Virus record (IMG/VR): IMGVR_UViG_3300044640_001495
Span: 1-64,000 of that record
Strand: one strand, 5' to 3'
DNA: 64,000 nt
The position numbers were made by a program, and so were the translations under genes. Positions within the stretch are counted from its first letter, which is position 1; each line of letters starts with the position of its first letter. Under the pieces are notes generated by a model. It saw only the letters and a program-made list of their open reading frames with translations, was not told the DNA's origin and searched no databases. Of this stretch, positions 22,706-58,484 are shown piece after piece.

Positions 22706-23116
22706 ATGAAAAAATTCTTATGGAAAATATTAGGTTTCCTTAGTTTGGGAATGGCCTATGTTGGATTAGTTACACCAGGTATCCCCTACTCAATCTTTGT
22801 GGTGTTTGCGGCCTATTGCTTTGCCAAAGGTAGTCCCAAGATGCATGCCTGGATTTACAATCACAAACTGTTTGGACCGTTCCTTACTAACTGGGGTGAA
22901 AAGCGTGTGTTCCCACAGAAGATGAAATACTTCATGTTGTTCATGATGACAACCAGTTTGATCACCATGTGGTTGACAGCAGTCCCAGTTCGTGGTATAA
23001 TATACACAGCAGTGTTTATGATGCTGGTGGCCATATGGGCTTGGAGATTCCCCAGCTCAGTTGAAGAATATGACAACAGAAAAGCACAAGGTAAAAAAAT
23101 TGGATGGATTAAATGA
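22706..23116 (+). CDS. DUF454/YbaN-family inner membrane protein
   Basis: GLVTPGIP..F...AAYCFAKGSP..H.W...H..FGP..NW motif. Confidence 0.8.
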   Translation: MKKFLWKILGFLSLGMAYVGLVTPGIPYSIFVVFAAYCFAKGSPKMHAWIYNHKLFGPFLTNWGEKRVFPQKMKYFMLFMMTTSLITMWLTAVPVRGIIYTAVFMMLVAIWAWRFPSSVEEYDNRKAQGKKIGWIK

Positions 23117-23763
23117 CACCTACCTATAAGGTCACTCCACTGTTTGGCGTGCCTTTGTACCAGACCAACATTGGGTCATTGGATAAAGGCATGCGCGAAT
23201 TCATTGAAAATCAAGAATATGAACGCATGGCCGCCGACAACGGTGACTATACAGTGAACAAGTATATTTTAGATACTCCAGAACTTGCTCCGTTGAAAGC
23301 TAAAATTATGAAAGCGGCAGATAATTTTATCTACACAGTCTTAGACGTAAAACGCAACATGGATTTTCGCATGGAGAACAGTTGGGTGAATCGTCATTAC
23401 ACAGGCGACTACTCTGGACAACACTATCATGGCAACAGCCTTATCAGTGGTGTTTATTACATAGACACAGGCGTTGATACTGGTGCATTTGTATGTCACA
23501 AAGACAAGGGCAACTATAACCTATGGACCGAAACTGTGAGAGTGGACTTCAATTATCAAGACCACGGTAACGATGCCAAGCTGAATTTCTTCAATGCCGA
23601 TGCTTGGGGTTTGTATCCTGCCAAAAATGACCTAATCATGTTCCCATCCATGATGACTCATTCGGTTGAGGAAAATCAATCGTCAAAGATACGATACAGT
23701 TTGGCCTTTAACCTATTCCCCCGAGGCACAGCCGGTGGTGTAATCAATACCCTAACTGTTTAA
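23113..23763 (+). CDS. 2OG-Fe(II) oxygenase (TIGR02466-like)
   Basis: LFGVPLY, SWVN, HYHGNSLISGVYY, MFPSMMTHSV and RYSLAFN. Confidence 0.85.
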   Translation: MTPTYKVTPLFGVPLYQTNIGSLDKGMREFIENQEYERMAADNGDYTVNKYILDTPELAPLKAKIMKAADNFIYTVLDVKRNMDFRMENSWVNRHYTGDYSGQHYHGNSLISGVYYIDTGVDTGAFVCHKDKGNYNLWTETVRVDFNYQDHGNDAKLNFFNADAWGLYPAKNDLIMFPSMMTHSVEENQSSKIRYSLAFNLFPRGTAGGVINTLTV

Positions 23764-24411
23764 ATGCAACATAGAATAACGCCATTGTTTGCAATACCTT
23801 TGTTTCAAACACATCTAGGCAATCTCAATATCATTACCAAAACTTGGTTAAAAAATCTTGAGTATCCTTATCAACGAACCGGCCACGATGGCACTGACGA
23901 AGATCTCGATGAGGGATCAAAAGGCATGTACATTCTAGACAAACCTCAACTCAAGAATTTGCGTAAACAGATAACAGACGCAATTGATTATTTTGTGCAT
24001 CAATCGTTGGGCGTCGACGATGGTATAAAATTTGATATATCAACCAGCTGGGCCAATCGATATCTAAATGATGAACTTGTGATTAAACATAATCATAAAA
24101 ATTCTATGATCAGTGGAGTCTACTATATAGAAACAACAGCCACCACTGCTCCAATTGTGTTTGAACAGGCATGGTCGCATGTGAACCTGTTTCACTCAAC
24201 AACAACGCCCACGTTTAAAAAAACTCATGTGAACGAGTATAACTCAAGCACACATACCATTTATCCGAGAACTGGAGATCTCTTGTTGTTCCCTTCCCAT
24301 CTAGAACATACAGTTCCCGCAAGTGATTCAACAGACACTAGATACAGTCTAGCATTTAATTGTTTTGCTAGAGGACATATGGGATTTGGAACTGGACAAA
24401 TAACACTATGA
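23764..24411 (+). CDS. 2OG-Fe(II) oxygenase (TIGR02466-like), tandem paralog
   Basis: HNHKNSMISGVYY, LFPSHLEHTV and RYSLAFN. Confidence 0.85.
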   Translation: MQHRITPLFAIPLFQTHLGNLNIITKTWLKNLEYPYQRTGHDGTDEDLDEGSKGMYILDKPQLKNLRKQITDAIDYFVHQSLGVDDGIKFDISTSWANRYLNDELVIKHNHKNSMISGVYYIETTATTAPIVFEQAWSHVNLFHSTTTPTFKKTHVNEYNSSTHTIYPRTGDLLLFPSHLEHTVPASDSTDTRYSLAFNCFARGHMGFGTGQITL

Positions 24412-24703: not shown

Positions 24704-24907
24704 ATGGTAACAGGAAAAGTAAAATGGTTTAACGACGCCAAAGGTTTTGGATTCATTACTCCGGACGATGGTGGCGCAGACTTATTTGCTCACTTTTCAC
24801 AGATTAATTCGAGTGGCTTCAAGAGCCTACAAGAAGGACAAAGTGTAAGGTTTGAAGTGACTCAGGGTCAAAAAGGCGAGCAGGCTAGTAATATTCAAGC
24901 TGCCTAA
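24704..24907 (+). CDS. cspA: cold-shock protein
   Basis: [17 protein letters not shown] (RNP1) and LFAHFS (RNP2). Confidence 0.95.
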
Positions 24908-24910
24908 AAA

Positions 24911-25270
24911 ATTGTTGTAGAAGTCTTAAAGTAAGGCATTCTGGACGCGGGTTCGACTCCCGCCAGGTCCACCATAAAGGAGATTAGTATGGATAACGAA
25001 TATAGTGCTCTAGTTGGCTTTATTGTTGTTATCGTAGTATTTGCTCTAGTCCTTTTATGATGGGCCTGCCATGGTTTCGACAGGGTGAGATAGGATAAAG
25101 ATCAACACGTGGGGTCACGTAAAATACAAAAAACGTAAATGCAAACGCAGATACATTCGACTTCAGCGCAATGAGCTTCACTGGAAACACTGTTTCCGGC
25201 AAAAGCAAAGTTGCTCTAGCTGCCTAAAAAACAGCGGTCCGAGGTAGTTATACCTTGTCATCCAAAATAG
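24911..25270 (+). ncRNA. ssrA: circularly permuted (two-piece) tmRNA
   Basis: Acceptor piece ...GGACGCGGGTTCGACTCCCGCCAGGTCCACCA ends at 24974. The coding piece starts GGGCCTG at 25062 and pairs with CAGGTCC, including G3-U70. Tag ORF 25141-25227 encodes ANADTFDFSAMSFTGNTVSGKSKVALAA*. Outer boundaries are approximate. Confidence 0.9.
24989..25060 (+). CDS. 23-aa hydrophobic peptide encoded in the tmRNA intervening segment
   Basis: AAGGAG RBS directly after CCA; MDNEYSALVGFIVVIVVFALVLL*; stop ends 1 nt before the tmRNA 5' end. Confidence 0.55.
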   Translation: MDNEYSALVGFIVVIVVFALVLL

Positions 25271-25271
25271 C

Positions 25272-25298
25272 AGAACCCGCTTCGGCGGGTTTCTTTTT
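25272..25298 (+). terminator. intrinsic terminator after tmRNA
   Basis: agaacccgc-TTCG-gcgggtttcttttt. Confidence 0.88.
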
Positions 25299-25328
25299 GG
25301 CAATATTTCCAAATTATCGTCTCGAAGT

Positions 25329-25371
25329 TGTGCGTGTACGCACATGTTTTGTTTGAAAGTTCACGTATAAT
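25329..25371 (+). promoter_or_regulatory. putative activator-dependent promoter with CRP-family-like palindrome at -41.5
   Basis: TGTGCG-TGTA-CGCACA at 25329-25344, TATAAT at 25366-25371, no consensus -35. Confidence 0.5.
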
Positions 25372-25403
25372 GGTAGGATCATATTATTTAAAAAGGAAAA
25401 ATT

Positions 25404-26300
25404 ATGACAACAACAATTACAATCAAAGACAAACCGATTAACGCAACCTATCAAAATGTTACAGGCCTAACAGGCGGAACCGGAACAGGTGCTGCTTTTG
25501 ATGTTACTAAAACAGACGGAGTATACTCTGTTGTTCTAGACAGTCTAGTAGCCAGTGCAGGATCGGGATACCTTGCTGGTGACACAATCACTCTTGCTGG
25601 TACGGCACTAGGCGGAGCGGCAGCTAACAACTTGATCGTTACTGTTGCTACAGTTGGCACTGCTGGTAAAATTGCTACGTTCGGTGTAGTAGGTACAGGT
25701 CGTGCTGGCGACGGCACAGTTGATATTACAGTTGATGTTACCGGTACTACAGGTATTGACACTTACACAATGGGAGGCGCAAGCACAGAGTTCACAACAA
25801 CTAAAACTGCTAGTAAAGTAACCTTGGCAAGTACCTTGATATCTAACATGGAATTTAATCTTGCTGATCACGAGCGTGTTGTATTCACAGACAAAGCTAT
25901 TGCCTATGATGCCGCAGGTCGTGCAGGTGATGTATACTCATTACTAGCAGCCGCACTTGGTACTGCTGATGTTACTAACGCATACAAAGGCATTGGCATT
26001 GATCTAGCCGACAAAGGTTGGACCAACAAACAATTGGCAGAAGCCCTATTAAACACAGACGTTTACAAAACAGACGCAGGTGGGGTTGGCAATGAAACTT
26101 TCATCAAGCACGTTTACAAAAACGTATTTGGCACTGATGCTGCATTGACACAGGTTACAGACTACACAGTATGGATGACTAACAATAACCTGTCACAAGC
26201 TGATGTTTTGGTTGCCGCAAGTGAGTTAGCAGCTTTTGAAACAACTATTGGGTTGGTCGGTTTAGCCACAACCGGCATTGAATATACTCCTGTTGTATAA
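25404..26300 (+). CDS. surface-protein-like ORF with DUF4214-like C-terminal domain
   Basis: Thr/Gly/Ala-rich beta region, then YSLLAAALG...NETFIKHVYKNVFG...LSQADVL. Confidence 0.65.
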   Translation: MTTTITIKDKPINATYQNVTGLTGGTGTGAAFDVTKTDGVYSVVLDSLVASAGSGYLAGDTITLAGTALGGAAANNLIVTVATVGTAGKIATFGVVGTGRAGDGTVDITVDVTGTTGIDTYTMGGASTEFTTTKTASKVTLASTLISNMEFNLADHERVVFTDKAIAYDAAGRAGDVYSLLAAALGTADVTNAYKGIGIDLADKGWTNKQLAEALLNTDVYKTDAGGVGNETFIKHVYKNVFGTDAALTQVTDYTVWMTNNNLSQADVLVAASELAAFETTIGLVGLATTGIEYTPVV

Positions 26301-26318: not shown

Positions 26319-26342
26319 AGGCTCTTCGGAGCCTTTTCTTTA
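26319..26342 (+). terminator. intrinsic terminator
   Basis: aggctc-TTCG-gagccttttctt. Confidence 0.8.
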
Positions 26343-26398
26343 TTAATTTTTTCTATTAGCGTCATTAAAATAATTATTGAAAAAACTATTAAAATTGC

Positions 26399-26475: not shown

Positions 26476-27015
26476 ATGAAAACAGTCGGACACAAATTAG
26501 AAAAATTCACAGTCACCGGCGTCAAGCCAGGACAACCAGAAGACGCTTTCTTTGACATTACAGAGAAGTCATTTGAAGGCAAGTGGAAAGTAATCGTTTA
26601 CTATCCAAAAGACTTTACATTTGTATGCCCAACAGAAATCGTAGCCTACGACAAATTGACAGGCGACTTTGCTGATCGTGATGCTGTATTGCTCACAGGT
26701 TCGACAGACAACGAGTTCTGTAAAGTTAGCTGGCAAACAGCTCACGCTGATTTGAAGAAGATCACACACAATCAGTTTGCCGACACACAACGTGGTGAGT
26801 TGAGCTTGATTGAACAGTTGGGCGTATTCTATGCACCTGCTGGTGCCGCACTTCGCGCAACATTCATTGTTGATCCAGACAACGTTATTCAACACGTTAC
26901 TGTCAACAACTTGAACGTTGGTCGTAGCCCAGAAGAAACTCTGCGTGTGTTGGATGCGCTACAAACCGGTGAGCTTTGCGCTTGTAACCGTACAGTTGGC
27001 GGCGAAACACTTTAA
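26476..27015 (+). CDS. ahpC: peroxiredoxin AhpC
   Basis: YYPKDFTFVCPTE peroxidatic Cys, GRSPEE and LCAC resolving Cys. Confidence 0.95.
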   Translation: MKTVGHKLEKFTVTGVKPGQPEDAFFDITEKSFEGKWKVIVYYPKDFTFVCPTEIVAYDKLTGDFADRDAVLLTGSTDNEFCKVSWQTAHADLKKITHNQFADTQRGELSLIEQLGVFYAPAGAALRATFIVDPDNVIQHVTVNNLNVGRSPEETLRVLDALQTGELCACNRTVGGETL

Positions 27016-27215
27016 TGGAAACTAGGACAAGGACCTTGGTCAAGACCATCATCTATAGGATTTGGGTCTTATGCTCAACCTATGTGATGTTGTTGGTAAC
27101 AGGACAAAGTTTAACACAGGCCCTTGTTCCTACAATCATTATAAATTGTGTCTGGATGACATCATACTATTTGTATGATAGACTTTGGGCACGTATTAAA
27201 TGGGGACGAAAATGA
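27015..27215 (+). CDS. DUF2061-like small membrane protein
   Basis: ET..RTLVKTIIYRI...YYLYDRLW.RIKWG signature. Confidence 0.7.
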   Translation: METRTRTLVKTIIYRIWVLCSTYVMLLVTGQSLTQALVPTIIINCVWMTSYYLYDRLWARIKWGRK

Positions 27216-27718
27216 GTTTTATTGAAACAGTAAAAGGCGCATTGCCAGACTACGCAAAAGACACCAAGTTAAATATTGACGCTGTGTTTGTGCGTAGTAC
27301 ATTGGATGCTGATGTTGCTATGGGTTGTGCCGTGGCCGCACTCGCCGCAACTGGCAACGGTAAGGTGTTAAGCATATTGTTAGCAGATGCGCCAGTACAC
27401 GCAGAGTCAGCAATGACAGCGGCGAGCATTATGGCACAGAACAACGTCTGGTATCCCTACGTTGAGATGGCCGATGATCCTGCTCTAAAAGGCCTGCCAG
27501 CACAGTTACGCATGAATGCCATTGCCAGTCACGGTGGAACAACCAAGAGCAACTTTGAGGCATTTAGTTTGGCCGCAAGTATTGTAGGCAAGTGCCACTT
27601 CTGTGTTAAGGCACATTACGAAACGCTCAAGCAAGAAGGCTACACTGTAGAACAGCTTCGTGATATTGGCCGCATTGCCAGTGTGATGAATTCGGTGGCA
27701 AAAGTGTTAAACAGCTAA
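27212..27718 (+). CDS. ahpD: alkyl hydroperoxide reductase AhpD
   Basis: LPDYAKD.KLN, MAQNNVWY and SIVGKCHFCVKAH (CxxC-H). Confidence 0.93.
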   Translation: MSFIETVKGALPDYAKDTKLNIDAVFVRSTLDADVAMGCAVAALAATGNGKVLSILLADAPVHAESAMTAASIMAQNNVWYPYVEMADDPALKGLPAQLRMNAIASHGGTTKSNFEAFSLAASIVGKCHFCVKAHYETLKQEGYTVEQLRDIGRIASVMNSVAKVLNS

Positions 27719-34555: not shown

Positions 34556-36457
34556 ATGTCTAAGATCATCGGTATCGATTTAGGTACCACAAACTCATGT
34601 GTAGCTGTTATTGAAAACGGCATCCCCAAAGTAATTGAAAATGCAGAAGGTGCTAGAACAACACCTTCAATCGTTGCCTACGGCAAAGATGAAATTCTCG
34701 TAGGTGCTTCAGCAAAACGTCAATCAGTTACTAACCCCAAAAATACAATCTATGCTTCAAAGCGTTTGATTGGACGCAAGTTTAAAGAGGAAGCTGTTCA
34801 AAAGGACATCAACCTTATGCCCTACGAAATCATGGAAGCCAAGAATGGCGATGCATGGGTTCGTGCTAATGGTCAAGAGTTGGCGCCTCCACAAATCTCA
34901 GCAGAAGTTTTGCGTAAGATGAAAAAGACAGCGGAGGATTATCTAGGTCATGAAGTTACTCAAGCAGTTATCACAGTTCCTGCGTACTTTAACGACAGCC
35001 AAAGACAAGCTACTAAAGACGCTGGACAAATCGCAGGCCTGGAGGTACTCCGTATTATTAACGAGCCTACTGCGGCAGCTCTTGCTTATGGCGTTGATAA
35101 AGCTGATAAAAGAGATAGGAAAATTGCTGTTTACGATCTTGGTGGCGGTACATTCGATGTTTCGATCATCGAAATAGCCAACGTAGATGGAGACAAGCAG
35201 ATCGAAGTATTGAGCACAAACGGCGATACATTCCTTGGCGGTGAAGACTTTGACCAACGTATTATGGATTACTTGGTTGAAGAATTCCGCAAGGATCAAG
35301 GTGTTGATCTAACCAAAGATGTACTTGCTCTACAGCGTTTAAAAGAATCTGCTGAGAAGGCAAAAATTGAATTGTCTAGCTCTGCAAGCACAAGTGTTAA
35401 TTTGCCATACATCACAGCAGACGCAAGTGGCCCTAAGCACATGAATATCACTATTAGCCGTAGCAAGTTAGAACAGCTTGTTGACGAGTTAATCACTCGC
35501 TCAATTGAGCCATGTAAAGTTGCCATGAAAGATGCAGGTGTCACAGCCGCTGACATCGATGAAGTTATTCTTGTTGGTGGTATGACACGTATGCCAAAGG
35601 TACAAGAAGCCGTTGAAAAATTATTTGGCAAGGCACCACGTAAGGATGTTAATCCAGACGAAGCTGTTGCCGCAGGTGCCGCAGTACAAGGTGCTGTTCT
35701 CGGTGGCGATCGTACTGATGTGTTGTTGCTAGATGTGACTCCACTGAGTTTGGGTATTGAAACAATGGGCGGTGTGTTTGCAAAGGTTATTCAAAAGAAC
35801 ACAACCATTCCGACTAAGGGACAGCAGACATTCTCAACAGCAGAAGACAATCAACCTGCGGTGACTATCAAGGTATTCCAAGGTGAGCGTGATCTAGTAC
35901 AATACAACAAATTGCTAGGTGAATTCAATCTTGAAGGTATTCAACCGCAACGTCGTGGACAGCCGCAAATCGAAGTTACATTTGATATTGATGCTAACGG
36001 TATCATGAATATCTCGGCCAAGGACAAGAGCACAGGCAAAGAAAACAAGATCACTATTAAATCAGATAGCGGTCTAAGCAAAGAAGAAATTGAACGCATG
36101 GTACGTGAAGCTGAAGAAAATGCAGAGAGTGATCAAAAAGCTCGAACATTAATTGATGCTCGCAACCAAGCTGAAGCAACTGTACATGAAGTTAAAAAAG
36201 ATCTTGAAGAATTTAAAGATGAATTAACTGATACAGAAAAGACAGAAATCGAGACAGCAGTTAAATCAGTCGAAGACGCTATGAAAGAAGATGACGCTGA
36301 TAAAATTAAAGCTGAACTCGAAAAAGTTTTTCCGGCAATGAAAACATTGTTGGAGAAAAAGCAGGCCAAGGAACAGGCAGCTCAGGCGCCTCAACCAGAA
36401 GCCAAAGCAGATGACAATGTGGTAGACGCTACGTTTACAGAAACTAAGTCTAGCTAA
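34556..36457 (+). CDS. dnaK: Hsp70 chaperone DnaK
   Basis: [26 protein letters not shown] and VTFDIDANG motifs. Confidence 0.98.
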
Positions 36458-40304: not shown

Positions 40305-40787
40305 ATGGTTAAGTTTATAATAGCCACCATATTAATGGCTACAGCATCAGTAGTCAATGGTGCAGAATTACAACACAATTTTAATAGTCCATCCTTTTCA
40401 GGGATTGGATATAGTTCTCACGTTCTAACACTCTATCAATTAGAGACACAGGCCAGAGACAAAAATAAAGCAGCAGCTGATGCTCTTAAAGCAAAGGCAG
40501 AGAGTGATGCATTAAACACTCCGCAGGCTAAGTTTCAAGCAAACTTAGAAAGTCGTATCTATTCACAGTTGGCCAAGCAGATTACAGATAGTTTGTTTGG
40601 TGTTAACGGTGTTCCAGTGTGTACTGCTAACAGTGCAGGTAATTGCGGACAAATGGAAGTTGCCGGTAATAACATCACCTGGAAAGTAGAAGGTACATTT
40701 ATTATTGTTAGAATTGAAAATGTATTAGATCCAAGACAATTTACAGAAATGAAGGTGCCAAGTGGCACATTTGGATTTGGAGGATAA
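40305..40787 (+). CDS. csgF: curli assembly protein CsgF-like
   Basis: Signal peptide then AELQHNFNSPSFSG.G...Q motif; LESRIYSQLAKQI..SLFG. Confidence 0.8.
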   Translation: MVKFIIATILMATASVVNGAELQHNFNSPSFSGIGYSSHVLTLYQLETQARDKNKAAADALKAKAESDALNTPQAKFQANLESRIYSQLAKQITDSLFGVNGVPVCTANSAGNCGQMEVAGNNITWKVEGTFIIVRIENVLDPRQFTEMKVPSGTFGFGG

Positions 40788-40790
40788 TAC

Positions 40791-42026
40791 ATGAAACAAA
40801 CACTATTATCCCTGGCCGTTGTAGCAGTATTGAGTGGGTGCGCATCAAGTTCGGCTATCAAAGAAAAAATAACTGGAAACCAGTTTGACGAACCGAAAGT
40901 CGAGTCTAGTAAATTTCTAAAGAAAGACTCTAATAAATTACAACCACCAGAAGGCGGACCGTTAACAGTGGCAGTGTATGGATTTAGAGATCTAACAGGG
41001 CAACGTAAAAGCCAGCCACTGATTGCGTCATTAAGTTCAGCTGTTACACAAGGTGCTGAAAACTATCTAATCAAGGCCCTACAGGATGTAGGTGATCAAC
41101 GCTGGTTCACAGTACTAGAACGTGTTGGCCTAGAGAACTTGATCAAAGAACGTCAAATGATTCGTCAAATGCGTGAGCAATACCAAGGCCGTGATGCCAA
41201 GATGTTGCCCCCAATGATGTTTGCCGGGATCATCATGGAAGGTGGCATTGTTGGCTACGATAGCAATACACTAACAGGCGGTAGTGGAGTAAGACTGTTT
41301 GGTATTGGGGCAAGCACACAATACCAATCAGACACTGTGACAGTTACCTTAAGAACAGTGAGCGTGTCTACAGGCGAAATTTTAACAACTGTGACAGTAA
41401 CTAAAACAGTGTTAAGTTATATGGACAAAGTGACATTATTGCGATTTGTTGGAGATGGCACAACTTTAGGTGCAAATGCAAATGCATTAGAGGGTGAGAT
41501 CGGCGGCAGCATAAATGAAAGTATCAACAAGGCAATCGACGTAGCTGTACAGGCAGCAGTGATTCAAACTATTAATGAAGGTGCTCGTAAAGGACACTGG
41601 GCATTTAAAAGCAATAAAGTAAGTTCTCCGGTTGCCGTTATTCCGGCGATACCTGCACCAGTAGTAATACCTGCACCAGTAGTAATACCTGCACCAGTAG
41701 TAATATCAGTACCAGTAGTAGAGGAGAAGAAAGATGTCGTGGTTCAATCACAAGCCAAACCCGAAACCAAAACCGAAGCCGTATCCAGTGCCCCCGCAGA
41801 AATAAAGAAAGAAGTTGTACCGGTTGAAAAACTTTCAGGTGAGATGATTTTAAAGGAAGCTTCTTACATTTATAAAGAGCCCGACCTAACAAGTCAAAAA
41901 ACTTGGCAGTTTAAGAAAGGTGCTTTAGTTACAATTATAGGACAAGAGGGTGATTGGGTAGCAGTCAGTGACTCACAAAAACGAAAAGGATTTGTTAATA
42001 AGGATGTACTGGTTAACAAACCTTAA
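40791..42026 (+). CDS. csgG: curli secretion channel CsgG-like lipoprotein with C-terminal Pro/Val linker and SH3-like domain
   Basis: LSG-C lipobox; VAVYGFRDLTGQRK, SSAVTQGA, LERVGLENLIKERQMIR, EGGIVGYD and VTVTLRTVSV.TGEI. Confidence 0.9.
   Translation: MKQTLLSLAVVAVLSGCASSSAIKEKITGNQFDEPKVESSKFLKKDSNKLQPPEGGPLTVAVYGFRDLTGQRKSQPLIASLSSAVTQGAENYLIKALQDVGDQRWFTVLERVGLENLIKERQMIRQMREQYQGRDAKMLPPMMFAGIIMEGGIVGYDSNTLTGGSGVRLFGIGASTQYQSDTVTVTLRTVSVSTGEILTTVTVTKTVLSYMDKVTLLRFVGDGTTLGANANALEGEIGGSINESINKAIDVAVQAAVIQTINEGARKGHWAFKSNKVSSPVAVIPAIPAPVVIPAPVVIPAPVVISVPVVEEKKDVVVQSQAKPETKTEAVSSAPAEIKKEVVPVEKLSGEMILKEASYIYKEPDLTSQKTWQFKKGALVTIIGQEGDWVAVSDSQKRKGFVNKDVLVNKP
41649..41720 (+). repeat. 18-bp coding tandem repeat (IPAPVV x3 plus one degenerate unit)
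   Basis: atacctgcaccagtagta x3, then atatcagtaccagtagta. Confidence 0.9.
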
Positions 42027-42029
42027 TGG

Positions 42030-42077
42030 TGTTGGAATTTTAACATGTTGAAATTTTAACATGTTGAAATTTTAACA
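42030..42077 (+). repeat. three tandem 16-bp quasi-palindromes TGTT-N8-AACA
   Basis: tgttggaattttaaca, tgttgaaattttaaca, tgttgaaattttaaca in the csgG-curlin intergenic region. Confidence 0.92.
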
Positions 42078-42220
42078 GCGGCATTTAATTTCTAGAGTAC
42101 AGAGATTAAATAAAATTACAAGAAGTAAGTCTACGGAGAGGAGTAGATTAGAGAAGTGGTATAATTATAGGTCAATGACCAGGAACTTGTCAGCAAACAA
42201 TAAACTGACATTTTAAAAAA

Positions 42221-43036
42221 ATGAAACAAACAATGACAGGCGGTTGTGGGTTGTCGAGAAAATTACTCACAGTGATGCTGATGAGCTTTGCCACCATAAG
42301 TGGTGCTCAGACAGCAACAGGTCCTAACAAGGTTTATATCGAACAAGTGGGTAGTAGCAATACTATCACAATTGAACAAGTTGGCGGGACTAACAATGTT
42401 GGCGGCGTTACTACAACTGTAGCAACGACAGTAGCAGGAACAGGTATTACTACACTGACTCCAGACGCACCGAGTGCTACTAACTATGGAACTATTACCG
42501 GAAGCACAAACATAGTTGACATTACACAAACAGGAAATGCTAACAGTAGCCAATACAATATTCGTGGAAGTAATAACAGCTACACTACTAATATGTTAGG
42601 CAATGGTAATCAAACTAGATTAACTATTGGCAATACCAACAACGCTACAAACAGCCAAAACGTTATTACAGAACAAATTATCGGTAATAACAATATGATT
42701 CTACAAGATCTAGTTGGTAGCAATATTACTACTAACACAGTTTTGGATGGAGATAATAACCAAGTTACTAGTAGTTTGTTAAGCAGCAGAGGTAGTGTAT
42801 CAAATGTAGCTAATGGAAACGCTAACGTGTTCAACATCCAGCAATTAGATGCAGCGGGTGCTAACGGACATGTTCTTGCTATGATGACCACAGGCGACTA
42901 CAACAGCATCACCACACAGCAACAAGGCACCAACGATACCACAGTTAATATACAAACACAGGGTAGCAACAACACTATCACAGTTCGTACAAGTAGTTCA
43001 GCTATTGTATCTCCAGCCACAGCGATTGCGAGATAA
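42221..43036 (+). CDS. curlin-repeat protein (CsgA/CsgB-like)
   Basis: Signal peptide; repeated x-Q-x-G-x-x-N units (IEQVGSSN, ITQTGNAN, QQQGTND, QTQGSNN); Asn/Thr/Gly-rich. Confidence 0.8.
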   Translation: MKQTMTGGCGLSRKLLTVMLMSFATISGAQTATGPNKVYIEQVGSSNTITIEQVGGTNNVGGVTTTVATTVAGTGITTLTPDAPSATNYGTITGSTNIVDITQTGNANSSQYNIRGSNNSYTTNMLGNGNQTRLTIGNTNNATNSQNVITEQIIGNNNMILQDLVGSNITTNTVLDGDNNQVTSSLLSSRGSVSNVANGNANVFNIQQLDAAGANGHVLAMMTTGDYNSITTQQQGTNDTTVNIQTQGSNNTITVRTSSSAIVSPATAIAR

Positions 43037-43038
43037 TT

Positions 43039-44133
43039 ATGCGTGTCTTGTTGTTAGCCCTACTGCTAACAGTGGCCAGCCCTTCTTGGGCTGGCATTGG
43101 CACGGTTTCAGAAAACAAAGGCACAGCCTGTGAAGTTGAACGCAATAAGAAAAAGATGTCAGGAGTTAAGGGTGCTGAAATTGAAAGCATGGACACTTAT
43201 ACAACCGGTGCTTGTGTAAGTAATATAACATTCAAAGATGATACCAAAGTCAAAGTTACAGAAAACAGCAGATTGCTTATCGACGATTTTGTTTTCGATC
43301 CTAAGAAATCAGATGCAGGCAAGCTCGCGCTCAAAGTTGGTATGGGCACTGTCCGATACGCTAGCGGACAAATTGCTAAAAATAATCCGCAACAGGTAAA
43401 CATCAAAACTCCAACAGCTACAGTAGCAGTGCGTGGCACTGATTTCACTATGACTGTGGATGAAACTGGGCAAAGTCTTATCATGCTGGTTCCTAGTTGT
43501 AAAGACGAAAAAGACGTTAAACAATTTGAACTAGATGAACAACGATGTAAGGTTGGCAGTATCACAGTGACTACAGGCATTGGATCAGTGACCTTAGACA
43601 AGGCATTCGAAGCTACCTATGTCACCAGTGCTTCAATGATGCCAACTTCCCCAGTTATTGTCAATACCGTTGAAGGCAAGATAGGTAATAACTTAATCAT
43701 TGTTAAGCCTCAAGAAGTCTTGCAGGCAATTAAAGATGCCGGCAGATCAAAACGTGATACTGAATTAGAAGAACTCGAGGCAGACGCCCAACGACAAATA
43801 GCTATGCGTGTTGAAAAAGCCAACGAAAAAAGCGACCCTGTACTATTGCCAGATACATTTTCTGATGGTAAGAAAGGATGTAATCCAAGTACTACTGTTT
43901 GCGTGGCATGGGAAAAGAACGACTCTCCTGATATACAAAGTAAAGGCAAAGGTACAGCCTATAGAAGTAATACAGATCATTATGCTGAAGTTAAAACCAC
44001 AGGCTATGATTCAAACACATTTGTGTCTATAAGCCACAATGATCAATATGCGTTTACGTTTGTTGGTAGCGGAGATCCAGGCGGTAATGTAGTAAACATT
44101 GTACAAAAGACTGGAGTGTTAAGACGTCCATGA
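43039..44133 (+). CDS. FecR-domain exported protein
   Basis: Signal peptide; ITFKDDTKVKVTENSRLLIDDF, GTVRYASG and IKTPTATVAVRGTDF. Confidence 0.85.
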   Translation: MRVLLLALLLTVASPSWAGIGTVSENKGTACEVERNKKKMSGVKGAEIESMDTYTTGACVSNITFKDDTKVKVTENSRLLIDDFVFDPKKSDAGKLALKVGMGTVRYASGQIAKNNPQQVNIKTPTATVAVRGTDFTMTVDETGQSLIMLVPSCKDEKDVKQFELDEQRCKVGSITVTTGIGSVTLDKAFEATYVTSASMMPTSPVIVNTVEGKIGNNLIIVKPQEVLQAIKDAGRSKRDTELEELEADAQRQIAMRVEKANEKSDPVLLPDTFSDGKKGCNPSTTVCVAWEKNDSPDIQSKGKGTAYRSNTDHYAEVKTTGYDSNTFVSISHNDQYAFTFVGSGDPGGNVVNIVQKTGVLRRP

Positions 44134-45785
44134 AACGAATAATTTTTTTATTGTTATTATTCTGCTCTAACGCATTTGGCGCCCTAACAGATATAAAGTT
44201 TGGACGATACCAAATTGCAGACAGCCAATGGAATGTCAGTGCCTGTTTGAATACAACAACCTGCCAAATTTACAGTAAGCAACCTGGTACTATGTACAAA
44301 ATACCATGGTTCAATGGAACTTGGAGTTGGCAGTCAGGACAGTATGTACAATTTGGGTTGACAGGGAATGCCAGCTATCCCTACGAAGGCAAAGTTTACA
44401 ACAGCAACGGCACACTAGCTGGTACTATAGGCACAGGTAAAATTGTCAACATGGGTCCAGATTATTTCTTCTTTGTAGGCAATGACAACAATACAGGACA
44501 GCTATTCAGTGGCAGCTCGGGTATGTCAACTACCAGCGGAGTATCGTGGACTGGCGCACTTAATCCGACTATACAACAGGCCGATACATACGCTAACGCC
44601 ACGTATTCTACAGTACCGTTAAGTTCAGGGCAGACTGCTACATCTACTCCTAGTAATGCGGCGCCGCCGCCACCTGCGCCTACCGCAATTTACAATAACA
44701 GTTCTGGTGTGTATGTTACCAGAGCAATACCAACTAGCAATAATAGTCCAAGCAATGAAGGTCCTACTAATGCGTTTGATAACAATCCCTATACCAAGTA
44801 CTTAAACTTCGATAAACAAAATGCTGGAGTTACTATCCAATTAAATGCTGGGCGAGTTGTTACTAGTTTTAAATTAACTACAGCTAATGATGCTGTAGAG
44901 CGAGATCCAACAAGTTATAAACTCTACGGATCAAATGACGGATCAACATGGACATTAATTCAACAAGGCGCACTATCTTTGTCCGATAATAGATTTAGTG
45001 TTAGTAGCGATATCGCAGTAACTAACTCTACGGCCTATGTTTATTATTTTATGATATTCCCTTCTATTAAAAACAATGCTGGTAATAGCGTACAAATTGC
45101 AGAGATTACCTATTTCTATGATGCTAATAGTACAACCACAAGTACAGCAACTAGCAATACTATTGTTGATCCAACAACCGCCGCCGCAAATACGTTATGT
45201 TGCGGTGGATCAGCAGCCGCATTTAATGCTAACACAACAAACACGGCTAAAGTTTTAACATTCGTTAATAGAACAACTGCCGATAGCCAAGTACACATAG
45301 AACAGATCGGCACACAAAACGTAGTTGAAGTAAATCAAAGCGGGACTAAAAATAATTATGTCGAATATTACGGCAATGGTCTAAGCAATGATATTAATAT
45401 CGCACAAACAGGAAATGCTACAACACAGGCAAATTATGTTGACTTGAGAGTTGTGGGTAATTTTAACTTAGTAGATCTACAACAGACCAGTACTGGTGGT
45501 ACTAAAGGAATATTTGCTGATGTCAGCGGCAATAACAATAGTTTGCTGGTACAACAAAAAGACGGCGGCAGTCACTATGCTGAAATCACACTAAGTGGCG
45601 GTAATAAGAATGTCGACGTACTGCAACAAGGCAGCGCCAGTCATATGGCCAAAGTTAATCTAAGCGGTACACCTACTGATCTAAGTCTAACACAAAGTGG
45701 CAGTACTCAAAACTACTATTCAATCACTCACAACTGCACCACTGTAGGCGGTTGTGCTAAAATTACTGTGACACAGGGACAATAA
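44130..45785 (+). CDS. exported protein with discoidin/F5-8-like domain and C-terminal curlin repeats
   Basis: EGPTNAFDNNPYTKYL...RDPTSYKLYGSNDGSTW discoidin-like segment; C-terminal IEQIGTQN, NQSGTKNN, AQTGNAT and LQQGSASH repeats. Confidence 0.72.
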   Translation: MKRIIFLLLLFCSNAFGALTDIKFGRYQIADSQWNVSACLNTTTCQIYSKQPGTMYKIPWFNGTWSWQSGQYVQFGLTGNASYPYEGKVYNSNGTLAGTIGTGKIVNMGPDYFFFVGNDNNTGQLFSGSSGMSTTSGVSWTGALNPTIQQADTYANATYSTVPLSSGQTATSTPSNAAPPPPAPTAIYNNSSGVYVTRAIPTSNNSPSNEGPTNAFDNNPYTKYLNFDKQNAGVTIQLNAGRVVTSFKLTTANDAVERDPTSYKLYGSNDGSTWTLIQQGALSLSDNRFSVSSDIAVTNSTAYVYYFMIFPSIKNNAGNSVQIAEITYFYDANSTTTSTATSNTIVDPTTAAANTLCCGGSAAAFNANTTNTAKVLTFVNRTTADSQVHIEQIGTQNVVEVNQSGTKNNYVEYYGNGLSNDINIAQTGNATTQANYVDLRVVGNFNLVDLQQTSTGGTKGIFADVSGNNNSLLVQQKDGGSHYAEITLSGGNKNVDVLQQGSASHMAKVNLSGTPTDLSLTQSGSTQNYYSITHNCTTVGGCAKITVTQGQ

Positions 45786-45802
45786 AACAGCATAAATATT
45801 TC

Positions 45803-47845
45803 ATGCTGAAAAAAATCCTAACTAGTCCTTGGACTGCCCTATTAACATTGGCACTTATTGTAAGTATAAGAATCGCCGATCCTGTCTTTGTAGAAAGTGT
45901 AAGACTACGCTACTTTGACACACTGATTACTAATAAAACTCCAACTGCCAATAACATCTATACGGTAAACATAGATGAAGCAGCATTGGACAAATATGGC
46001 CAGTGGCCTTTACCAAGGGCAGAGTATGCAAAAATTATTAAAGATCTTTATGATCGTGGTGCTGGCCTTGTTGTGCTCAATGTTATCATGGCTGAGCCTG
46101 ATCGCACTGGTGGCGATGCTGTTCTCGCAACGGCCCTAAAACAATATCCAGTTGTAATGGGCAGCGTACCATCACAAAAAACTAAGAACTCTCCTCGCAA
46201 TCCAGGTAGTGCTGTACTAGGTCCAGAGTGGCAGGATCAAATTGTACAATACCCGGGACTTATTGCCAATGTACCTCAGTTAGAAAATGCAGCAGCAGGC
46301 ATTGGTATCGTTAGTACACTGCCAGAAGTAGACGGTGTTAATCGACGACTGCCCCTAGTTGTATCCGTTGATGGTAAATTATATCCCAGTATGTCTATGG
46401 AAGCACTTAGAGTCGCAGCTGGTGATTCAACCTTCCAAGTCAAGCTCAATGAAAATGGTGTTGAGAAAATGCGCATACCCAAGTTTGGTCCTATTACAAC
46501 AGATGCGTTAGGTCGTGTATGGATCGATTGGAGTCAAGAAAACCAACAGGCGAGTCTTTTGGACTTGCCCAAAAACTTTAATGGTGCTATAGTTATAGTA
46601 GGTCCAACAGCCGCAGGCATTGCTAATCCTTTGCCTACAGCTAAAGGTGCAGTGTGGCCGCAGGATGTACAAGCGGCAGCAATGGCAACTATGATCAACG
46701 GAGTGGTAATTCAACGTCCCGACTATGCCGACGGAGTTGAAATCCTAGCATTACTAGTATTCGGCATATTGTTAATTTTCTTATCGAGGTGGACTTATGT
46801 TGGAATTGGTTCTGCTGTGGTTATTGTTGGTGCCGTCGTTCCTGGTACTATGTACGCTTTCAGTAATTGGCTCATCCTATCAGATGCGACTGCAATCACG
46901 TTTGGGCTTGTTATCGTTGCTCTTCATACTTATGGCGTTAAATTTGTAAGCGAGTTCTTACAGAAGCAGGCCATAAAGAAACAGTTTGCGGGTTATTGCT
47001 CTAAAGAAGTTGTAGAGCTACTACAAAAAGATCCAGACTTAATCAAGCGTGGTGTACGCAAAGATGTATCAGTTATGTTCAGTGACCTGCGTGGCTTTAC
47101 TCCTATTGGTGAACACTATGGTGATGATGTAGGCGGACTAGGCAAGTATATGAACGGCTACATGGATGCTATCAGTCGTCCTATCATGAACAACAACGGC
47201 ATGATATTAAAGTATGTAGGTGATGCGAGTATGCACATACATGGTGCTCCTATCGAAGACACCAATCATGCTAGAACTATTGTTGCTGTTGGCCTAGAGA
47301 TGCTGGATGCTGTTGACGAATACACAAAACTGATGGAAGCACAAGGATTACCACCTGCCGCAATGGGTTGGGGTTGCAATACTGGTATTGGCTTTATTGG
47401 CGAGATGGGATCAACTGACAGACACGGTTATGACATCTTAGGTGATATGGTGTCAACCGCGGCACGACTAGAAGCACGTTGTAAGGCCTATGGTGTACTA
47501 TGTATTATTGGTGCTGAAACATACAATCGTACCAAAGACGACTTCTTTTATCTAATGATAGATAACTTACAGCCTAAAGGAAAAACTGTGGCAGACTTGA
47601 TCTATACAGTATTACGTACTAAGGGTGCAGACTACACTAGAGATAAGATAGCACACGAAGTGATGCATGACTTGTACCGACAGAAAAAGTTTGACGAAGC
47701 TGCCGCTATGTGTGCAAAGCTAAAGGGCAACTTTGGTGGACAAATGGACAAGTACTACAAAATCTGGATCGAGCGTTGCGACTTTATGAAACTGCAAGAT
47801 CTAGGCGACAACTGGAACGGCGAGTTTGTTGCTCACGAGAAGTAA
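45803..47845 (+). CDS. CHASE2 sensor plus class III adenylate/guanylate cyclase
   Basis: VNIDEAALDKYGQWP.PR and EVDGVNRRLPL CHASE2 motifs; three TM helices; VMFSDLRGFT, LKYVGD and GDMVSTAARLE. Confidence 0.92.
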   Translation: MLKKILTSPWTALLTLALIVSIRIADPVFVESVRLRYFDTLITNKTPTANNIYTVNIDEAALDKYGQWPLPRAEYAKIIKDLYDRGAGLVVLNVIMAEPDRTGGDAVLATALKQYPVVMGSVPSQKTKNSPRNPGSAVLGPEWQDQIVQYPGLIANVPQLENAAAGIGIVSTLPEVDGVNRRLPLVVSVDGKLYPSMSMEALRVAAGDSTFQVKLNENGVEKMRIPKFGPITTDALGRVWIDWSQENQQASLLDLPKNFNGAIVIVGPTAAGIANPLPTAKGAVWPQDVQAAAMATMINGVVIQRPDYADGVEILALLVFGILLIFLSRWTYVGIGSAVVIVGAVVPGTMYAFSNWLILSDATAITFGLVIVALHTYGVKFVSEFLQKQAIKKQFAGYCSKEVVELLQKDPDLIKRGVRKDVSVMFSDLRGFTPIGEHYGDDVGGLGKYMNGYMDAISRPIMNNNGMILKYVGDASMHIHGAPIEDTNHARTIVAVGLEMLDAVDEYTKLMEAQGLPPAAMGWGCNTGIGFIGEMGSTDRHGYDILGDMVSTAARLEARCKAYGVLCIIGAETYNRTKDDFFYLMIDNLQPKGKTVADLIYTVLRTKGADYTRDKIAHEVMHDLYRQKKFDEAAAMCAKLKGNFGGQMDKYYKIWIERCDFMKLQDLGDNWNGEFVAHEK

Positions 47846-58124: not shown

Positions 58125-58213
58125 GGACGAGTGCGCTGAATTGGTTGAAGGCAACGGACTGTAAATCCGCCACATAAGAAACATTGTAGGTTCGACTCCT
58201 ACCTCGTCCACCA
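58125..58213 (+). tRNA. tRNA-Tyr(GTA)
   Basis: Acceptor ggacgag/ctcgtcc, loop CT-GTA-AA, long variable arm, CCA. Confidence 0.9.
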
Positions 58214-58222
58214 AACGAATGG

Positions 58223-58251
58223 TTGACTTTTTTTTGGATTGGTGTTATACT
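58223..58251 (+). promoter_or_regulatory. sigma70-type promoter
   Basis: TTGACT-N17-TATACT. Confidence 0.75.
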
Positions 58252-58476: not shown

Positions 58477-58484
58477 CAATTTTA

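What the first reader, a model, noticed from the sequence alone, without database searches (positions are those of the whole stretch)
25329..25378. CRP/FNR-family-like palindrome centred exactly at -41.5 of the promoter for the surface-protein-like gene
Seen: TGTGCG-TGTA-CGCACA (25329-25344) and TATAAT at 25366-25371, with no consensus -35. If TATAAT is -12..-7, the palindrome centre is -41.5. Established: -41.5 is the class II CRP/FNR activation position and the CRP core is TGTGA-N6-TCACA. Inference: this gene is switched on by a host Crp-family regulator, possibly in response to cAMP made by the phage cyclase at 45803.
Basis: partly seen in the sequence, partly recalled or inferred. Interest (0 to 1): 0.65.

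Follow-up and report, generated by a model that had tools for sequence, protein, structure and literature searches.

The report
Conserved CRP-type activator site, phage promoter
A 16-base palindrome in front of one accessory gene of a 353-kb freshwater jumbo phage is conserved in dozens of related phages, placed exactly where a CRP-type activator sits, so this gene probably depends on a bacterial regulator; no dependence on the phage's own cyclase was seen.

Summary
TGTGCG-TGTA-CGCACA lies at 25329-25344 and TATAAT at 25366-25371. No -35 hexamer is present (CATGTT, 2 of 6), and the dyad centre is 29.5 bp before the -10 hexamer, which is -41.5.

One genome alone proves little, but relatives settle it. 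In 24 distinct upstream variants the arms are invariant and the 29.5-bp spacing is exact, while flanks, the central 4 nt, leader length and the upstream gene all vary.

Other relatives carry the dyad about 2 or 3 helical turns further upstream. Most of those have the near-ideal CRP core TGTGATCCGGATCACA, and all have a 4-6 of 6 -35 hexamer. Others lost the dyad and mostly have a 5 of 6 -35 hexamer.

This is the class II / class I / activator-independent pattern expected of a CRP-type activator site. It is not a terminator: the tmRNA upstream has its own terminator, and RNA contigs stop there.

No Crp-family protein is encoded by this phage or by nine relatives, so the regulator would come from the host. 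The host is unknown; the phage DnaK points to Burkholiderales-type betaproteobacteria, many of which have CRP-like proteins.

The phage cyclase is real and of adenylate type. Three near-complete relatives keep the dyad without any class III cyclase, so that link is unsupported. No transcription start, binding or effector was measured.

The parts
25329..25344 (.). 16-bp dyad TGTGCG-TGTA-CGCACA, proposed binding site of a dimeric CRP-type activator, centred at -41.5
   Evidence: One search gives the sequence. It is unique in the genome. The arms are invariant (2.0 bits) in 24 distinct relatives' variants while the centre varies.
25325..25350 (.). Extended conserved block AA-NN-dyad-NG-TT(T/C)T. 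The flanks are partly symmetric (ACA..TGT or ACT..AGT in some relatives).
   Evidence: Per-column information; variants listed.
25343..25348 (+). Position where a -35 hexamer would lie (CATGTT, 2 of 6), overlapped by the dyad
   Evidence: All class II variants score 1-2 of 6 here. The phage's ordinary promoters are TTGACA-17-TATAAT.
25366..25371 (+). -10 hexamer TATAAT
   Evidence: It is conserved as TATAAT, TACAAT or TATACT at a fixed 29.5 bp from the dyad centre in 24 variants.
25378..25378 (+). Predicted transcription start (A, 7 nt after the -10 hexamer); inferred, not mapped
   Evidence: Inference from the -10 position. Metatranscriptome contig depth in run X1 rises from 2.6 (25304-25370) to 20.6 (25371-25437), which is compatible but cannot define a start.
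25394..25397 (+). Shine-Dalgarno AGGA, 6 nt before the ATG
   Evidence: AAGGAA(A) is conserved in all relatives.
25404..26300 (+). Regulated gene, 298 aa (P0001). It has an N-terminal beta-rich unit and a C-terminal DUF4214-containing module like the C-termini of RTX / Ig-like surface proteins.
   Evidence: weak DUF4214 match; profile search and Pfam scan of the hits; Atlas leads.
26319..26344 (+). Intrinsic terminator (AGGCTC-TTCG-GAGCCT plus T-run) that closes a monocistronic unit
   Evidence: -11.4 kcal/mol, z -3.2. The next promoter, TTGACC-17-TACAAT, is at 26399.
25273..25300 (+). Terminator of the upstream two-piece tmRNA gene; it insulates the promoter from upstream transcription
   Evidence: -13.3 kcal/mol. 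RNA contig depth falls from about 130-160 to 2.6 after 25303.
24882..25318 (+). Permuted (two-piece) tmRNA gene. This is context, not part of the regulatory unit.
   Evidence: ARAGORN; Rfam RF04321 at 120.5 bits and RF01850 at 102 bits.
45803..47845 (+). It is context only; no link to the dyad is shown.
   Evidence: Its distribution in relatives does not follow the dyad.

Best explanation
The palindrome is the DNA binding site of a dimeric transcription activator of the CRP type. That type belongs to the CRP/FNR superfamily and recognises GTG...CAC half-sites. The activator is most likely encoded by the host.

The site sits at the class II position of a sigma-70-type promoter that has a perfect -10 hexamer but no -35 hexamer. 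The bound activator would replace the missing -35 contact and recruit host RNA polymerase. This would switch on a monocistronic, moron-like gene (25404-26300) for a small RTX / DUF4214-like, probably exported, protein.

Shown here: the sequence anatomy, its conservation, the fixed spacing, the trade-off with the -35 hexamer, the absence of a phage Crp-family gene, and the presence of CRP-like proteins in the bacterial order that gave the phage its DnaK.

Inferred, not shown: the transcription start, the binding itself, the direction of regulation (activation), the identity of the regulator and its effector, and the host.
For: 1. Conservation. In 24 distinct upstream variants from related phage contigs the twelve arm positions are invariant (2.0 bits). 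The flanks carry about 1.0-1.1 bits, the central 4 nt 1.35 and the 21-bp spacer 1.25.

2. Spacing. The dyad centre lies exactly 29.5 bp before the -10 hexamer in all 24 variants, and 30.5 bp in one more. The -10-to-ATG distance varies from 35 to 61 nt, and the upstream neighbour varies (tmRNA, different ORFs, a divergent gene).

3. Trade-off with the -35 hexamer.
- Class II variants match TTGACA at 1-2 of 6 positions.
- Variants with the dyad 49.5-51.5 or 61.5 bp before the -10 match at 4-6 of 6.
- Eight of the ten variants without a dyad match at 5 of 6.
- The offsets from the class II position are 20-22 and 32 bp, about 2 and 3 helical turns, so the site stays on the same face of the helix.

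4. Sequence type. Seven variants replace TGTGCG-N4-CGCACA with TGTGA-N6-TCACA. In five of them it is TGTGATCCGGATCACA, which is 14 of 16 identical to the ideal CRP core TGTGATCTAGATCACA (the ideal site is from my knowledge of Busby and Ebright).

5. Contrast with the phage's own promoters. G000 has 11 perfect TTGACA-17-TATAAT promoters in intergenic regions. The 25404 promoter is the only TATAAT without a -35 that carries the dyad. The dyad is unique in the genome and in relatives G009 and G010.

6. Source of the regulator. There is no cNMP_binding or HTH_Crp_2 domain in this phage, and no HTH_Crp_2 in nine relatives.

7. A plausible host regulator exists.
- The phage DnaK is closest to Burkholderiales.
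- 76 of 151 sampled genomes of that order encode CRP-like proteins (100-165 bits to NF008732).
- These proteins have FGE..RSA cNMP cassettes and a GASREMV(N/S)R recognition helix, the R-E-x-x-x-R pattern of CRP.
- One such genome (G021) has 9 intergenic TGTG-N8-CACA + 21 nt + TAnnnT sites against 0 for the reversed control. One of them is TGTGCGATAACGCACA, and most are followed by a gene.
Against: - No transcription start, binding or expression dependence was measured.
- The window's own site matches the CRP core at only 8 of 10 positions (TGTGC..GCACA).
- The host is unknown. The candidate genera tested have one-piece tmRNAs, unlike the phage. Polynucleobacter, Limnohabitans and Methylophilaceae genomes carry 0-1 copies of the dyad.
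- Class-I-like spacings are 1-2 bp longer than the E. coli optimum if TATACT is the -10 hexamer.
- The dyad is followed by a conserved TGTTTT, so it also looks like a weak terminator.
- Other dimeric helix-turn-helix families could give the same symmetry.
- The variants are related to each other, so the counts are not independent events, although the gene tree needs several changes of promoter type.
Confidence: 0.58

Rival explanations
1. The dyad is an operator for a repressor, or for an activator of another helix-turn-helix family (host or phage encoded, for example MarR, GntR, Cro/CI or LysR type). It is not a CRP-family site.
For: Dyad symmetry with a variable centre fits many dimeric DNA-binding proteins. 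At -41.5 a repressor would occlude the -35 region. The jumbo phage has hundreds of unannotated ORFs (455 crude ORFs). The window's site is only 8 of 10 to the CRP core.
Against: - A repressor does not explain why every promoter with the dyad at -41.5 lacks a -35 hexamer, while every promoter with the dyad further upstream or absent has one.
- A site at about -62 or -73 would not occlude polymerase.
- Orthologous sites in relatives are near-ideal CRP cores.
- The site is unique in 353 kb, so a dedicated phage factor would serve a single operator.
- No conserved neighbouring regulator gene exists, because the upstream neighbours differ.
Confidence: 0.2
2. The palindrome acts only as an RNA hairpin: a back-up intrinsic terminator or insulator after the tmRNA or upstream gene. 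It has no role in promoter activation.
For: The terminator scan lists it (6-bp stem, 4 GC pairs, tail TGTTTTGTTT). The T-rich tail is conserved within the class II group. In some relatives the flanks lengthen the stem to 9-10 bp, and no other terminator precedes it.
Against: - The hairpin is weak (-9.6 kcal/mol, z -1.5) compared with the phage's UUCG-loop terminators (-13.3 and -11.4).
- A proper terminator lies 29 nt upstream (25273-25300), and RNA contig depth collapses there, before the dyad.
- The fixed 29.5-bp distance to the -10 hexamer has no meaning for a terminator.
- Class-I-like relatives keep the dyad without a T-run (AGTTCAG.., CGTTTAGCC, TCCTGTG).
- In L051 the upstream gene is divergent.
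Confidence: 0.07
3. Dual role: the same dyad is an activator site on DNA and, when transcribed by read-through from upstream, a modest terminator that insulates the regulated promoter.
For: Both sets of features coexist in the class II group: the fixed promoter geometry and a conserved (T/A)GTTTT tail on one side only.
Against: The tail is not kept in class-I-like relatives. Read-through past 25303 is already very low.
Confidence: 0.1
4. A structural DNA element without a dedicated protein. The 16-22-nt perfectly alternating pyrimidine-purine palindrome could form Z-DNA or a cruciform and make the promoter sensitive to supercoiling. Alternatively it is a neutral relic kept by descent.
For: The whole dyad is alternating Py-Pu, and in some relatives so are its flanks (ACATGTGCGTACACGCACATGT). 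All six central variants keep the alternation, and they come in reverse-complement pairs (TGTA/TACA, TGTG/CACA), as after small loop inversions.
Against: - The TGTGA-type sites of relatives are not alternating, yet they occupy the equivalent place.
- The central changes are explained by three transitions plus inversions, so the alternation need not be selected.
- Invariance of 12 arm positions amid diverged flanks argues against neutrality.
Confidence: 0.05

Closest known systems
Class II CRP-dependent promoters of E. coli (for example galP1, melR and synthetic CC(-41.5); Busby and Ebright model; from my knowledge)
   Same: A 16-bp dyad with TGTG...CACA spaced as in TGTGA-N6-TCACA, centred at -41.5, overlapping a missing -35 hexamer, with a good -10 hexamer. 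Relatives show the same site at class-I-like distances with a -35 hexamer present.
   Different: The half-site is TGTGC(G), not TGTGA, in this phage. The regulator, effector and host are unknown, and the start site is not mapped. The promoter lies in a phage genome and drives a single accessory gene.
NtcA-dependent promoters in cyanophage genomes (GTA-N8-TAC at -41.5; from my knowledge)
   Same: A host global regulator of the CRP/FNR superfamily is co-opted by a T4-like phage at class II promoters of auxiliary genes.
   Different: The half-sites here are GTG/CAC, not GTA/TAC. The site is single, not a set of phage promoters. The host is probably a betaproteobacterium rather than a cyanobacterium.
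Vfr / Clp / GlxR-type CRP homologues outside the enterobacteria
   Same: CRP-like proteins of Burkholderiales found here share the R-E-x-x-x-R recognition helix and the FGE..RSA cassette. G021 shows class II-type sites with both TGTGA and TGTGCG half-sites.
   Different: None of these proteins was tested on this DNA. Some homologues (Clp) respond to c-di-GMP rather than cAMP (my knowledge), so the effector cannot be assumed.
T4 middle promoters (MotA box replacing the -35 hexamer)
   Same: A sigma-70 -10 hexamer with the -35 hexamer replaced by an activator site, in a T4-like phage.
   Different: MotA boxes are asymmetric, centred at -30 and present many times per genome. This dyad is symmetric, centred at -41.5 and unique in 353 kb.
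CsgGF-FecR-cyclase cassette of Methylophilales phage Melnitz and Pelagibacter phage HTVC008M (PMC9004378)
   Same: The cyclase at 45803-47845 is 44.5% identical to the Melnitz cyclase and lies in the same gene order. Both phages carry a two-piece tmRNA.
   Different: The paper's text has no occurrence of 'cyclase' and proposes no cAMP-CRP circuit or CRP site. Here the cassette is absent from five near-complete relatives, three of which keep the dyad.

Membership tests
CRP-type (CRP/FNR superfamily) activator binding site | Dyad of two 5-bp half-sites spaced as TGTGA-N6-TCACA | tested here: met
   The geometry is met. The window has TGTGC-N6-GCACA (8 of 10). Seven relatives' variants have 10 of 10, and five of those are 14 of 16 to the ideal core. 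It is not the FNR type TTGAT-N4-ATCAA.
CRP-type (CRP/FNR superfamily) activator binding site | Class II placement: centre near -41.5, overlapping a weak or absent -35 hexamer | tested here: met
   The centre is 29.5 bp before the -10 hexamer in the window and in 23 other distinct variants. The -35 match is 1-2 of 6. The position is measured from the -10 hexamer; the start site is not mapped.
CRP-type (CRP/FNR superfamily) activator binding site | The same site works from class I positions on the same helix face when a -35 hexamer is present | tested here: inconclusive
   Relatives place the dyad 49.5-51.5 and 61.5 bp before the -10 hexamer (20-22 and 32 bp further), always with a 4-6 of 6 -35 hexamer. 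This is anatomy only; function was not assayed.
CRP-type (CRP/FNR superfamily) activator binding site | A CRP-family protein is available in the infected cell | tested here: inconclusive
   None is found in the phage or in nine relatives. 76 of 151 sampled Burkholderiales genomes have one, but the host is not identified.
CRP-type (CRP/FNR superfamily) activator binding site | Bound by the protein, with effector-dependent activation (cAMP for CRP) | not testable with these tools
   This needs EMSA or footprinting and reporter assays.
Intrinsic (Rho-independent) terminator | Stable GC-rich stem-loop directly followed by a U-tract | tested here: inconclusive
   6-bp stem, -9.6 kcal/mol, z -1.5, tail UGUUUUGUUU. 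It is weaker than the phage's UUCG-loop terminators.
Intrinsic (Rho-independent) terminator | Marks the 3' end of the upstream transcript | tested here: not met
   The tmRNA has its own terminator at 25273-25300, and metatranscriptome contig depth falls there, before the dyad. The upstream genes differ among relatives.
Intrinsic (Rho-independent) terminator | The U-tract is retained wherever the hairpin is retained | tested here: not met
   Class-I-like relatives keep the dyad without a T-run.
Phage-specific promoter class (T4 MotA-type middle or TATAAATA late promoter) | The motif recurs at many promoters of the same genome | tested here: not met
   The dyad is unique in 353 kb. No other TATAAT-without-35 promoter carries it.
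LexA SOS box of beta/gammaproteobacteria (CTGT-N8-ACAG) | CTGT...ACAG dyad | tested here: not met
   The sequence reads TTGTG...CACAT; no C precedes TGT and no G follows ACA.

The most novel reading that the evidence does not exclude
In the subset of these phages that carry the CsgGF-FecR-CHASE2 cyclase cassette, including this one, the phage-made cAMP charges a host CRP-type regulator. That regulator then fires this phage promoter. The result would be a phage-built second-messenger switch that times export of a small RTX-like surface protein, for example for superinfection exclusion or surface remodelling.
Probability: 0.12. Interest if true: 0.75.

Novelty: new member of a known kind. Interest (0 to 1): 0.5.

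Why it matters
The finding suggests that a clade of abundant freshwater T4-like jumbo phages puts one accessory gene under a cellular global regulator instead of the phage's own consensus promoters. That would tie the gene's expression to the physiological state of the host.

The relatives form a natural series that a simple reporter experiment could test directly:
- a class II promoter without a -35 hexamer;
- a class-I-like promoter with a -35 hexamer;
- a promoter with no dyad and a near-consensus -35 hexamer.

The finding also gives a concrete readout for the unexplained adenylate-type cyclases of pelagiphage-like and Melnitz-like phages. The distribution seen here, however, argues that the promoter does not depend on that cyclase.

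The site could also help identify the host. The true host should encode a CRP-type protein that accepts both TGTGCG and TGTGA half-sites.

Tried and rejected
- DNA search of the locus against 50,697 phage records found only csp-like and tmRNA fragments. tblastn of the 298-aa protein found nothing. No cultured relative carries this gene.
- PHROGs gave no family for the protein. AlphaFold2 on a 17-row alignment gave pLDDT 50, so no fold search was run.
- Host identification stayed open. The nearest MCP relatives infect alpha- and gammaproteobacteria. DnaK points to Burkholderiales. Polynucleobacter, Limnohabitans and Methylophilaceae genomes have no beta-type permuted tmRNA above cut-off and 0-1 copies of the dyad.
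- One Limnohabitans copy lies 21 nt before TACGGT, upstream of a rubrerythrin-like ORF. This is a single anecdote.
- Across 301 Burkholderiales genomes the dyad is about three times as frequent as its reversed control (about 171 against 57 sites by my count). The clustered copies in G112 and G098 sit among short ORFs and may be some other repeated element. I treat this as a weak hint only.
- A scan of viral contigs for dyad + 21 nt + TAYAAT found 74 matches. Of these, 62 precede a P0001 homologue, 4 are cut by contig ends and 4 are reverse-strand matches in one subgroup. Only 3 distinct unrelated cases remain, which is about chance level, so no wider phage regulon was found.
- More distant homologues (below 50% identity) have no dyad.
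- An alternative promoter, TTCACG-16-TATTAT (25360-25387), was rejected. It would start inside the ribosome-binding region and is not conserved.
- LexA, LacI-type, MotA and late-promoter readings were rejected on sequence (see Membership tests).
- A literature search for the motif found nothing relevant. The moraphage paper (PMC12619734) describes another lineage.

Full report
**What is there**

The window is the first 64 kb of a 353,123-bp virus record (GC 41%, CheckV 98% complete). The phage is T4-like. A Gp23 capsid gene lies at 221179-222168. Its closest cultured relatives are the giant Rak2 / PA5oct-like myoviruses of Proteobacteria.

At 25329-25344 the sequence reads TGTGCG-TGTA-CGCACA, and at 25366-25371 TATAAT. 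The hexamer where a -35 would lie is CATGTT (2 of 6). There is no extended -10. The dyad centre is 29.5 bp before the first base of the -10 hexamer, which is -41.5 if transcription starts at A25378.

Upstream lies a permuted two-piece tmRNA gene (24882-25318) with its own strong terminator at 25273-25300. Downstream are an AGGA ribosome-binding site, a 298-aa ORF (25404-26300), a terminator at 26319-26344, and then a fresh TTGACC-17-TACAAT promoter for the next gene. The ORF is therefore a self-contained, moron-like unit.

**Is it more than chance?**

On its own, hardly. TGTG-N8-CACA occurs 4 times in the window against 2.09 expected. It occurs 20 times in the genome, and 18 of those are inside ORFs. 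The full dyad is unique in the genome. The joint event, the dyad exactly 29.5 bp before a good intergenic -10 hexamer, is improbable (about 5e-4 by my estimate). The real test is comparative.

**Relatives**

The 298-aa protein has orthologues (75-100% identity) on 80 viral contigs from lake metagenomes. It has more than 1,600 90%-identity clusters in the large protein collection, all unnamed. The upstream 200 nt fall into 44 distinct variants.

In 24 of them the twelve arm positions are invariant (2.0 bits), while the other parts carry less:

| Region | Information (bits) |
|---|---|
| Dyad arms | 2.0 |
| -10 hexamer | 1.84 |
| Central four bases | 1.35 |
| 21-bp spacer | 1.25 |
| Flanks | about 1.0-1.1 |

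In all 24 the centre-to-hexamer distance is exactly 29.5 bp, and in one more it is 30.5 bp. Meanwhile the leader length ranges from 35 to 61 nt. The upstream neighbour is in turn the tmRNA, various ORFs with or without their own terminator, or a divergent gene. The dyad therefore travels with the promoter, not with whatever lies upstream.

**The trade-off with the -35 hexamer**

| Variant class | Distance from dyad centre to -10 hexamer | Match to TTGACA |
|---|---|---|
| Dyad at class II position (25 variants) | 29.5 bp (30.5 in one) | 1-2 of 6 |
| TGTGCG dyad further upstream (2 variants) | 49.5 and 50.5 bp | TAGACT, TTGACT |
| TGTGA-N6-TCACA (7 variants) | 51.5 bp (one at 61.5) | TTGACA, 6 of 6 |
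| No dyad (10 variants) | none | TTGACT, 5 of 6, in eight of them |

Five of the seven TGTGA variants read TGTGATCCGGATCACA.

The offsets from the class II position are 20-22 and 32 bp, about two and three helical turns. This is the textbook relation between class II (-41.5) and class I (-61.5, -71.5) CRP-dependent promoters and activator-independent promoters (Busby and Ebright; my knowledge). TGTGATCCGGATCACA differs from the ideal CRP core only at its two central bases.

A gene tree of the protein needs several changes of promoter type, so these are not just two clades.

**The phage's ordinary promoters**

G000 has 11 perfect TTGACA-17-TATAAT promoters in intergenic regions and more near-perfect ones. 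The host polymerase therefore reads the standard sigma-70 consensus, and the missing -35 hexamer at this gene is an exception. No other TATAAT-without-35 promoter in the genome carries the dyad.

**Terminator or hairpin?**

The scan lists the dyad as terminator-like. Several results speak against that role.
- As RNA it folds at only -9.6 kcal/mol (z -1.5). The phage's UUCG-loop terminators fold at -13.3 and -11.4.
- Contigs of four freshwater metatranscriptomes cover the csp gene and the tmRNA well. Depth drops from about 130-160 to 2.6 after 25303, before the dyad. Some cover resumes from 25371. Contigs cannot define ends, and DNA carry-over is possible, so this is supportive only.
- The class-I-like relatives keep the dyad without any T-run.

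A minor insulating role in the class II group cannot be excluded.

**Who binds?**

No cNMP-binding or Crp-type HTH domain is found in six-frame searches of this phage, and no Crp-type HTH domain in nine relatives. The controls for these searches rang. A CRP-family regulator would therefore be the host's.

The host is not known.
- The phage DnaK (34556-36457) is 65-76% identical to DnaK of Burkholderiales. All 80 best genome hits are beta- or gammaproteobacterial, with Polynucleobacter, Rubrivivax and Limnohabitans on top.
- The tmRNA scores as beta-type permuted, yet representatives of those genera lack such a tmRNA.

In a sample of 151 Burkholderiales genomes, 76 encode full-length CRP-like proteins. 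These carry the FGE..RSA cNMP cassette and a GASREMV(N/S)R recognition helix, the R-E-x-x-x-R pattern that reads GTG in CRP (the residue roles are from my knowledge).

One of these genomes, G021, has nine intergenic TGTG-N8-CACA + 21 nt + TAnnnT sites against none for the reversed control. They include TGTGCGATAACGCACA and a TGTGA/CGCACA hybrid, and most lie before a gene. A cellular CRP-type regulon with this architecture, tolerating both half-site types, therefore exists in that order. Whether G021 is close to the host is unknown.

**The cyclase idea**

The ORF at 45803-47845 has a CHASE2 sensor domain and a class III cyclase domain. It lies in a CsgF/CsgG-FecR cassette syntenic with Methylophilales phage Melnitz (44.5% identity) and Pelagibacter phage HTVC008M. 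The Melnitz paper's text has no occurrence of 'cyclase' and names no function for this gene.

In the alignment to solved cyclases it has Lys (..ILKYVGD..) and Asp (..YDILGD..) at the two substrate-specifying positions. These are the adenylate pair. The transition-state Asn appears as Ser (the residue roles are from my knowledge).

Its distribution does not follow the dyad (with a positive control):

| Genome | Completeness | Class III cyclase | Dyad |
|---|---|---|---|
| G000 | 98% | present | class II |
| G011 | 86% | present | class II |
| G012 | 79% | present | class II |
| G010 | 92% | absent | class II |
| G008 | 95% | absent | class-I-like |
| G009 | 99% | absent | class-I-like |
| G006 | 100% | absent | none |
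| G007 | 95% | absent | none |

The promoter element therefore does not depend on a phage cyclase. A modulating role in the cyclase-bearing phages is possible but has no support here.

**The regulated gene**

P0001 has a weak C-terminal DUF4214 match. A profile search of 1.8 billion representatives shows two modules.
- Residues about 12-110 recur up to nine times in proteins of 2,000-2,900 aa.
- Residues about 112-297 form the extreme C-terminus of many proteins of 450-1,950 aa.

The larger proteins carry RTX nonapeptide repeats and Ig-like or cadherin-like domains. These are typical substrates of type I secretion and surface-layer proteins (my knowledge). 'Surface-protein-like' is thus a fair label, and export by a host type I system is an inference. 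The structure model was too poor to use.

**Verdict**

The core of the interpretation, a CRP-type activator site at the class II position, is well supported by comparative anatomy. The host origin of the regulator is the economical reading. The cyclase link is not supported.

The finding is a new member of a known kind: a phage accessory gene placed under a host global regulator, as with NtcA sites in cyanophages. It comes with an unusually clean natural series of promoter architectures.

Noticed in passing
window 24976-25062: The intervening segment of the permuted tmRNA gene lies between the CCA end of the acceptor piece and the 5' end of the coding piece. It holds a 23-codon hydrophobic ORF (24990-25061, MDNEYSALVGFIVVIVVFALVLL) with AAAGGAG 8 nt upstream. 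RNA contigs of one run join 24977 to 25053, which suggests variants with another or no intervening segment.
   Followed up: partly
window 40305-47845: A CsgF-like / CsgG / FecR / F5-8C / CHASE2-cyclase cassette, syntenic with Methylophilales phage Melnitz and partly with Pelagibacter phage HTVC008M. The cyclase has adenylate-type Lys/Asp residues, but Ser at the catalytic Asn position. The cassette is absent from five near-complete relatives.
   Followed up: partly
window 34556-36457: A full-length DnaK (Hsp70) gene in the phage, 65-76% identical to DnaK of Burkholderiales (Polynucleobacter, Rubrivivax, Limnohabitans). This is the best clue to the host lineage.
   Followed up: partly
G000:C1 6055, 49902, 57466, 92588, 306488, 311292-323186: Eleven perfect 12-of-12 sigma-70 promoters (TTGACA-17-TATAAT) about 30-40 nt before start codons. 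Six of them form a run on the minus strand at 311-323 kb, probably an early gene block.
   Followed up: no
window 25404-26300 (P0001): The protein is modular. Its N-terminal unit (about 12-110) recurs up to 9 times in 2,000-2,900-aa proteins. Its C-terminal module (about 112-297) is the C-terminus of RTX, Ig-like and cadherin-like proteins.
   Followed up: partly
window 25329-25344 and relatives L013, L028, L043: The dyad is a perfect alternating pyrimidine-purine tract, up to 22 nt with flanks in relatives. The central variants come as reverse-complement pairs (TGTA/TACA, TGTG/CACA), as after small inversions of a hairpin loop. This gives possible Z-DNA or cruciform potential.
   Followed up: partly
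L007:2960-3000 and similar (L006, L013, L023, L042): Many relatives have an insert of about 20-26 nt in the 5' leader with an inverted repeat (TAAAC...GTTTA) that the window lacks. The leader length therefore varies from 35 to 61 nt while the dyad-to-hexamer spacing stays fixed.
   Followed up: no
L187, L216, L217, L230 (L007-type relatives): In one subgroup a TATAAT also lies 21 nt from the dyad on the opposite strand, reading into the antisense of the tmRNA terminator. This may be a chance match or a divergent promoter sharing the site.
   Followed up: no
G021 (loci L273-L281): An unnamed Burkholderiales genome with two CRP-like genes has nine intergenic TGTG-N8-CACA + 21 nt + TAnnnT sites against 0 for the control. 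They lie before genes that look like PilC, a PP2C phosphatase, a Ser/Thr kinase and CsbD, which suggests a class II CRP-type regulon.
   Followed up: partly
G112:C1:526148-529786 (L260); G098:C1:1706998-1708682 (L263): TGTGCG-N4-CGCACA copies cluster, with four copies within 3.6 kb among short ORFs, often as GTC-TGTGCG..CGCACA-GAC. They may be operators of a mobile element or another repeated element.
   Followed up: partly
window 58125-62198: An array of 23 tRNA genes on the plus strand, including tRNA-Ile(tat).
   Followed up: no
window 23113-24411 and 26476-27718: The regulated gene is flanked by stress and redox accessory genes. Upstream are two tandem 2OG-Fe(II) oxygenases and a cold-shock protein (24704-24907). 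Downstream are a peroxiredoxin and a CMD / AhpD-like protein.
   Followed up: no
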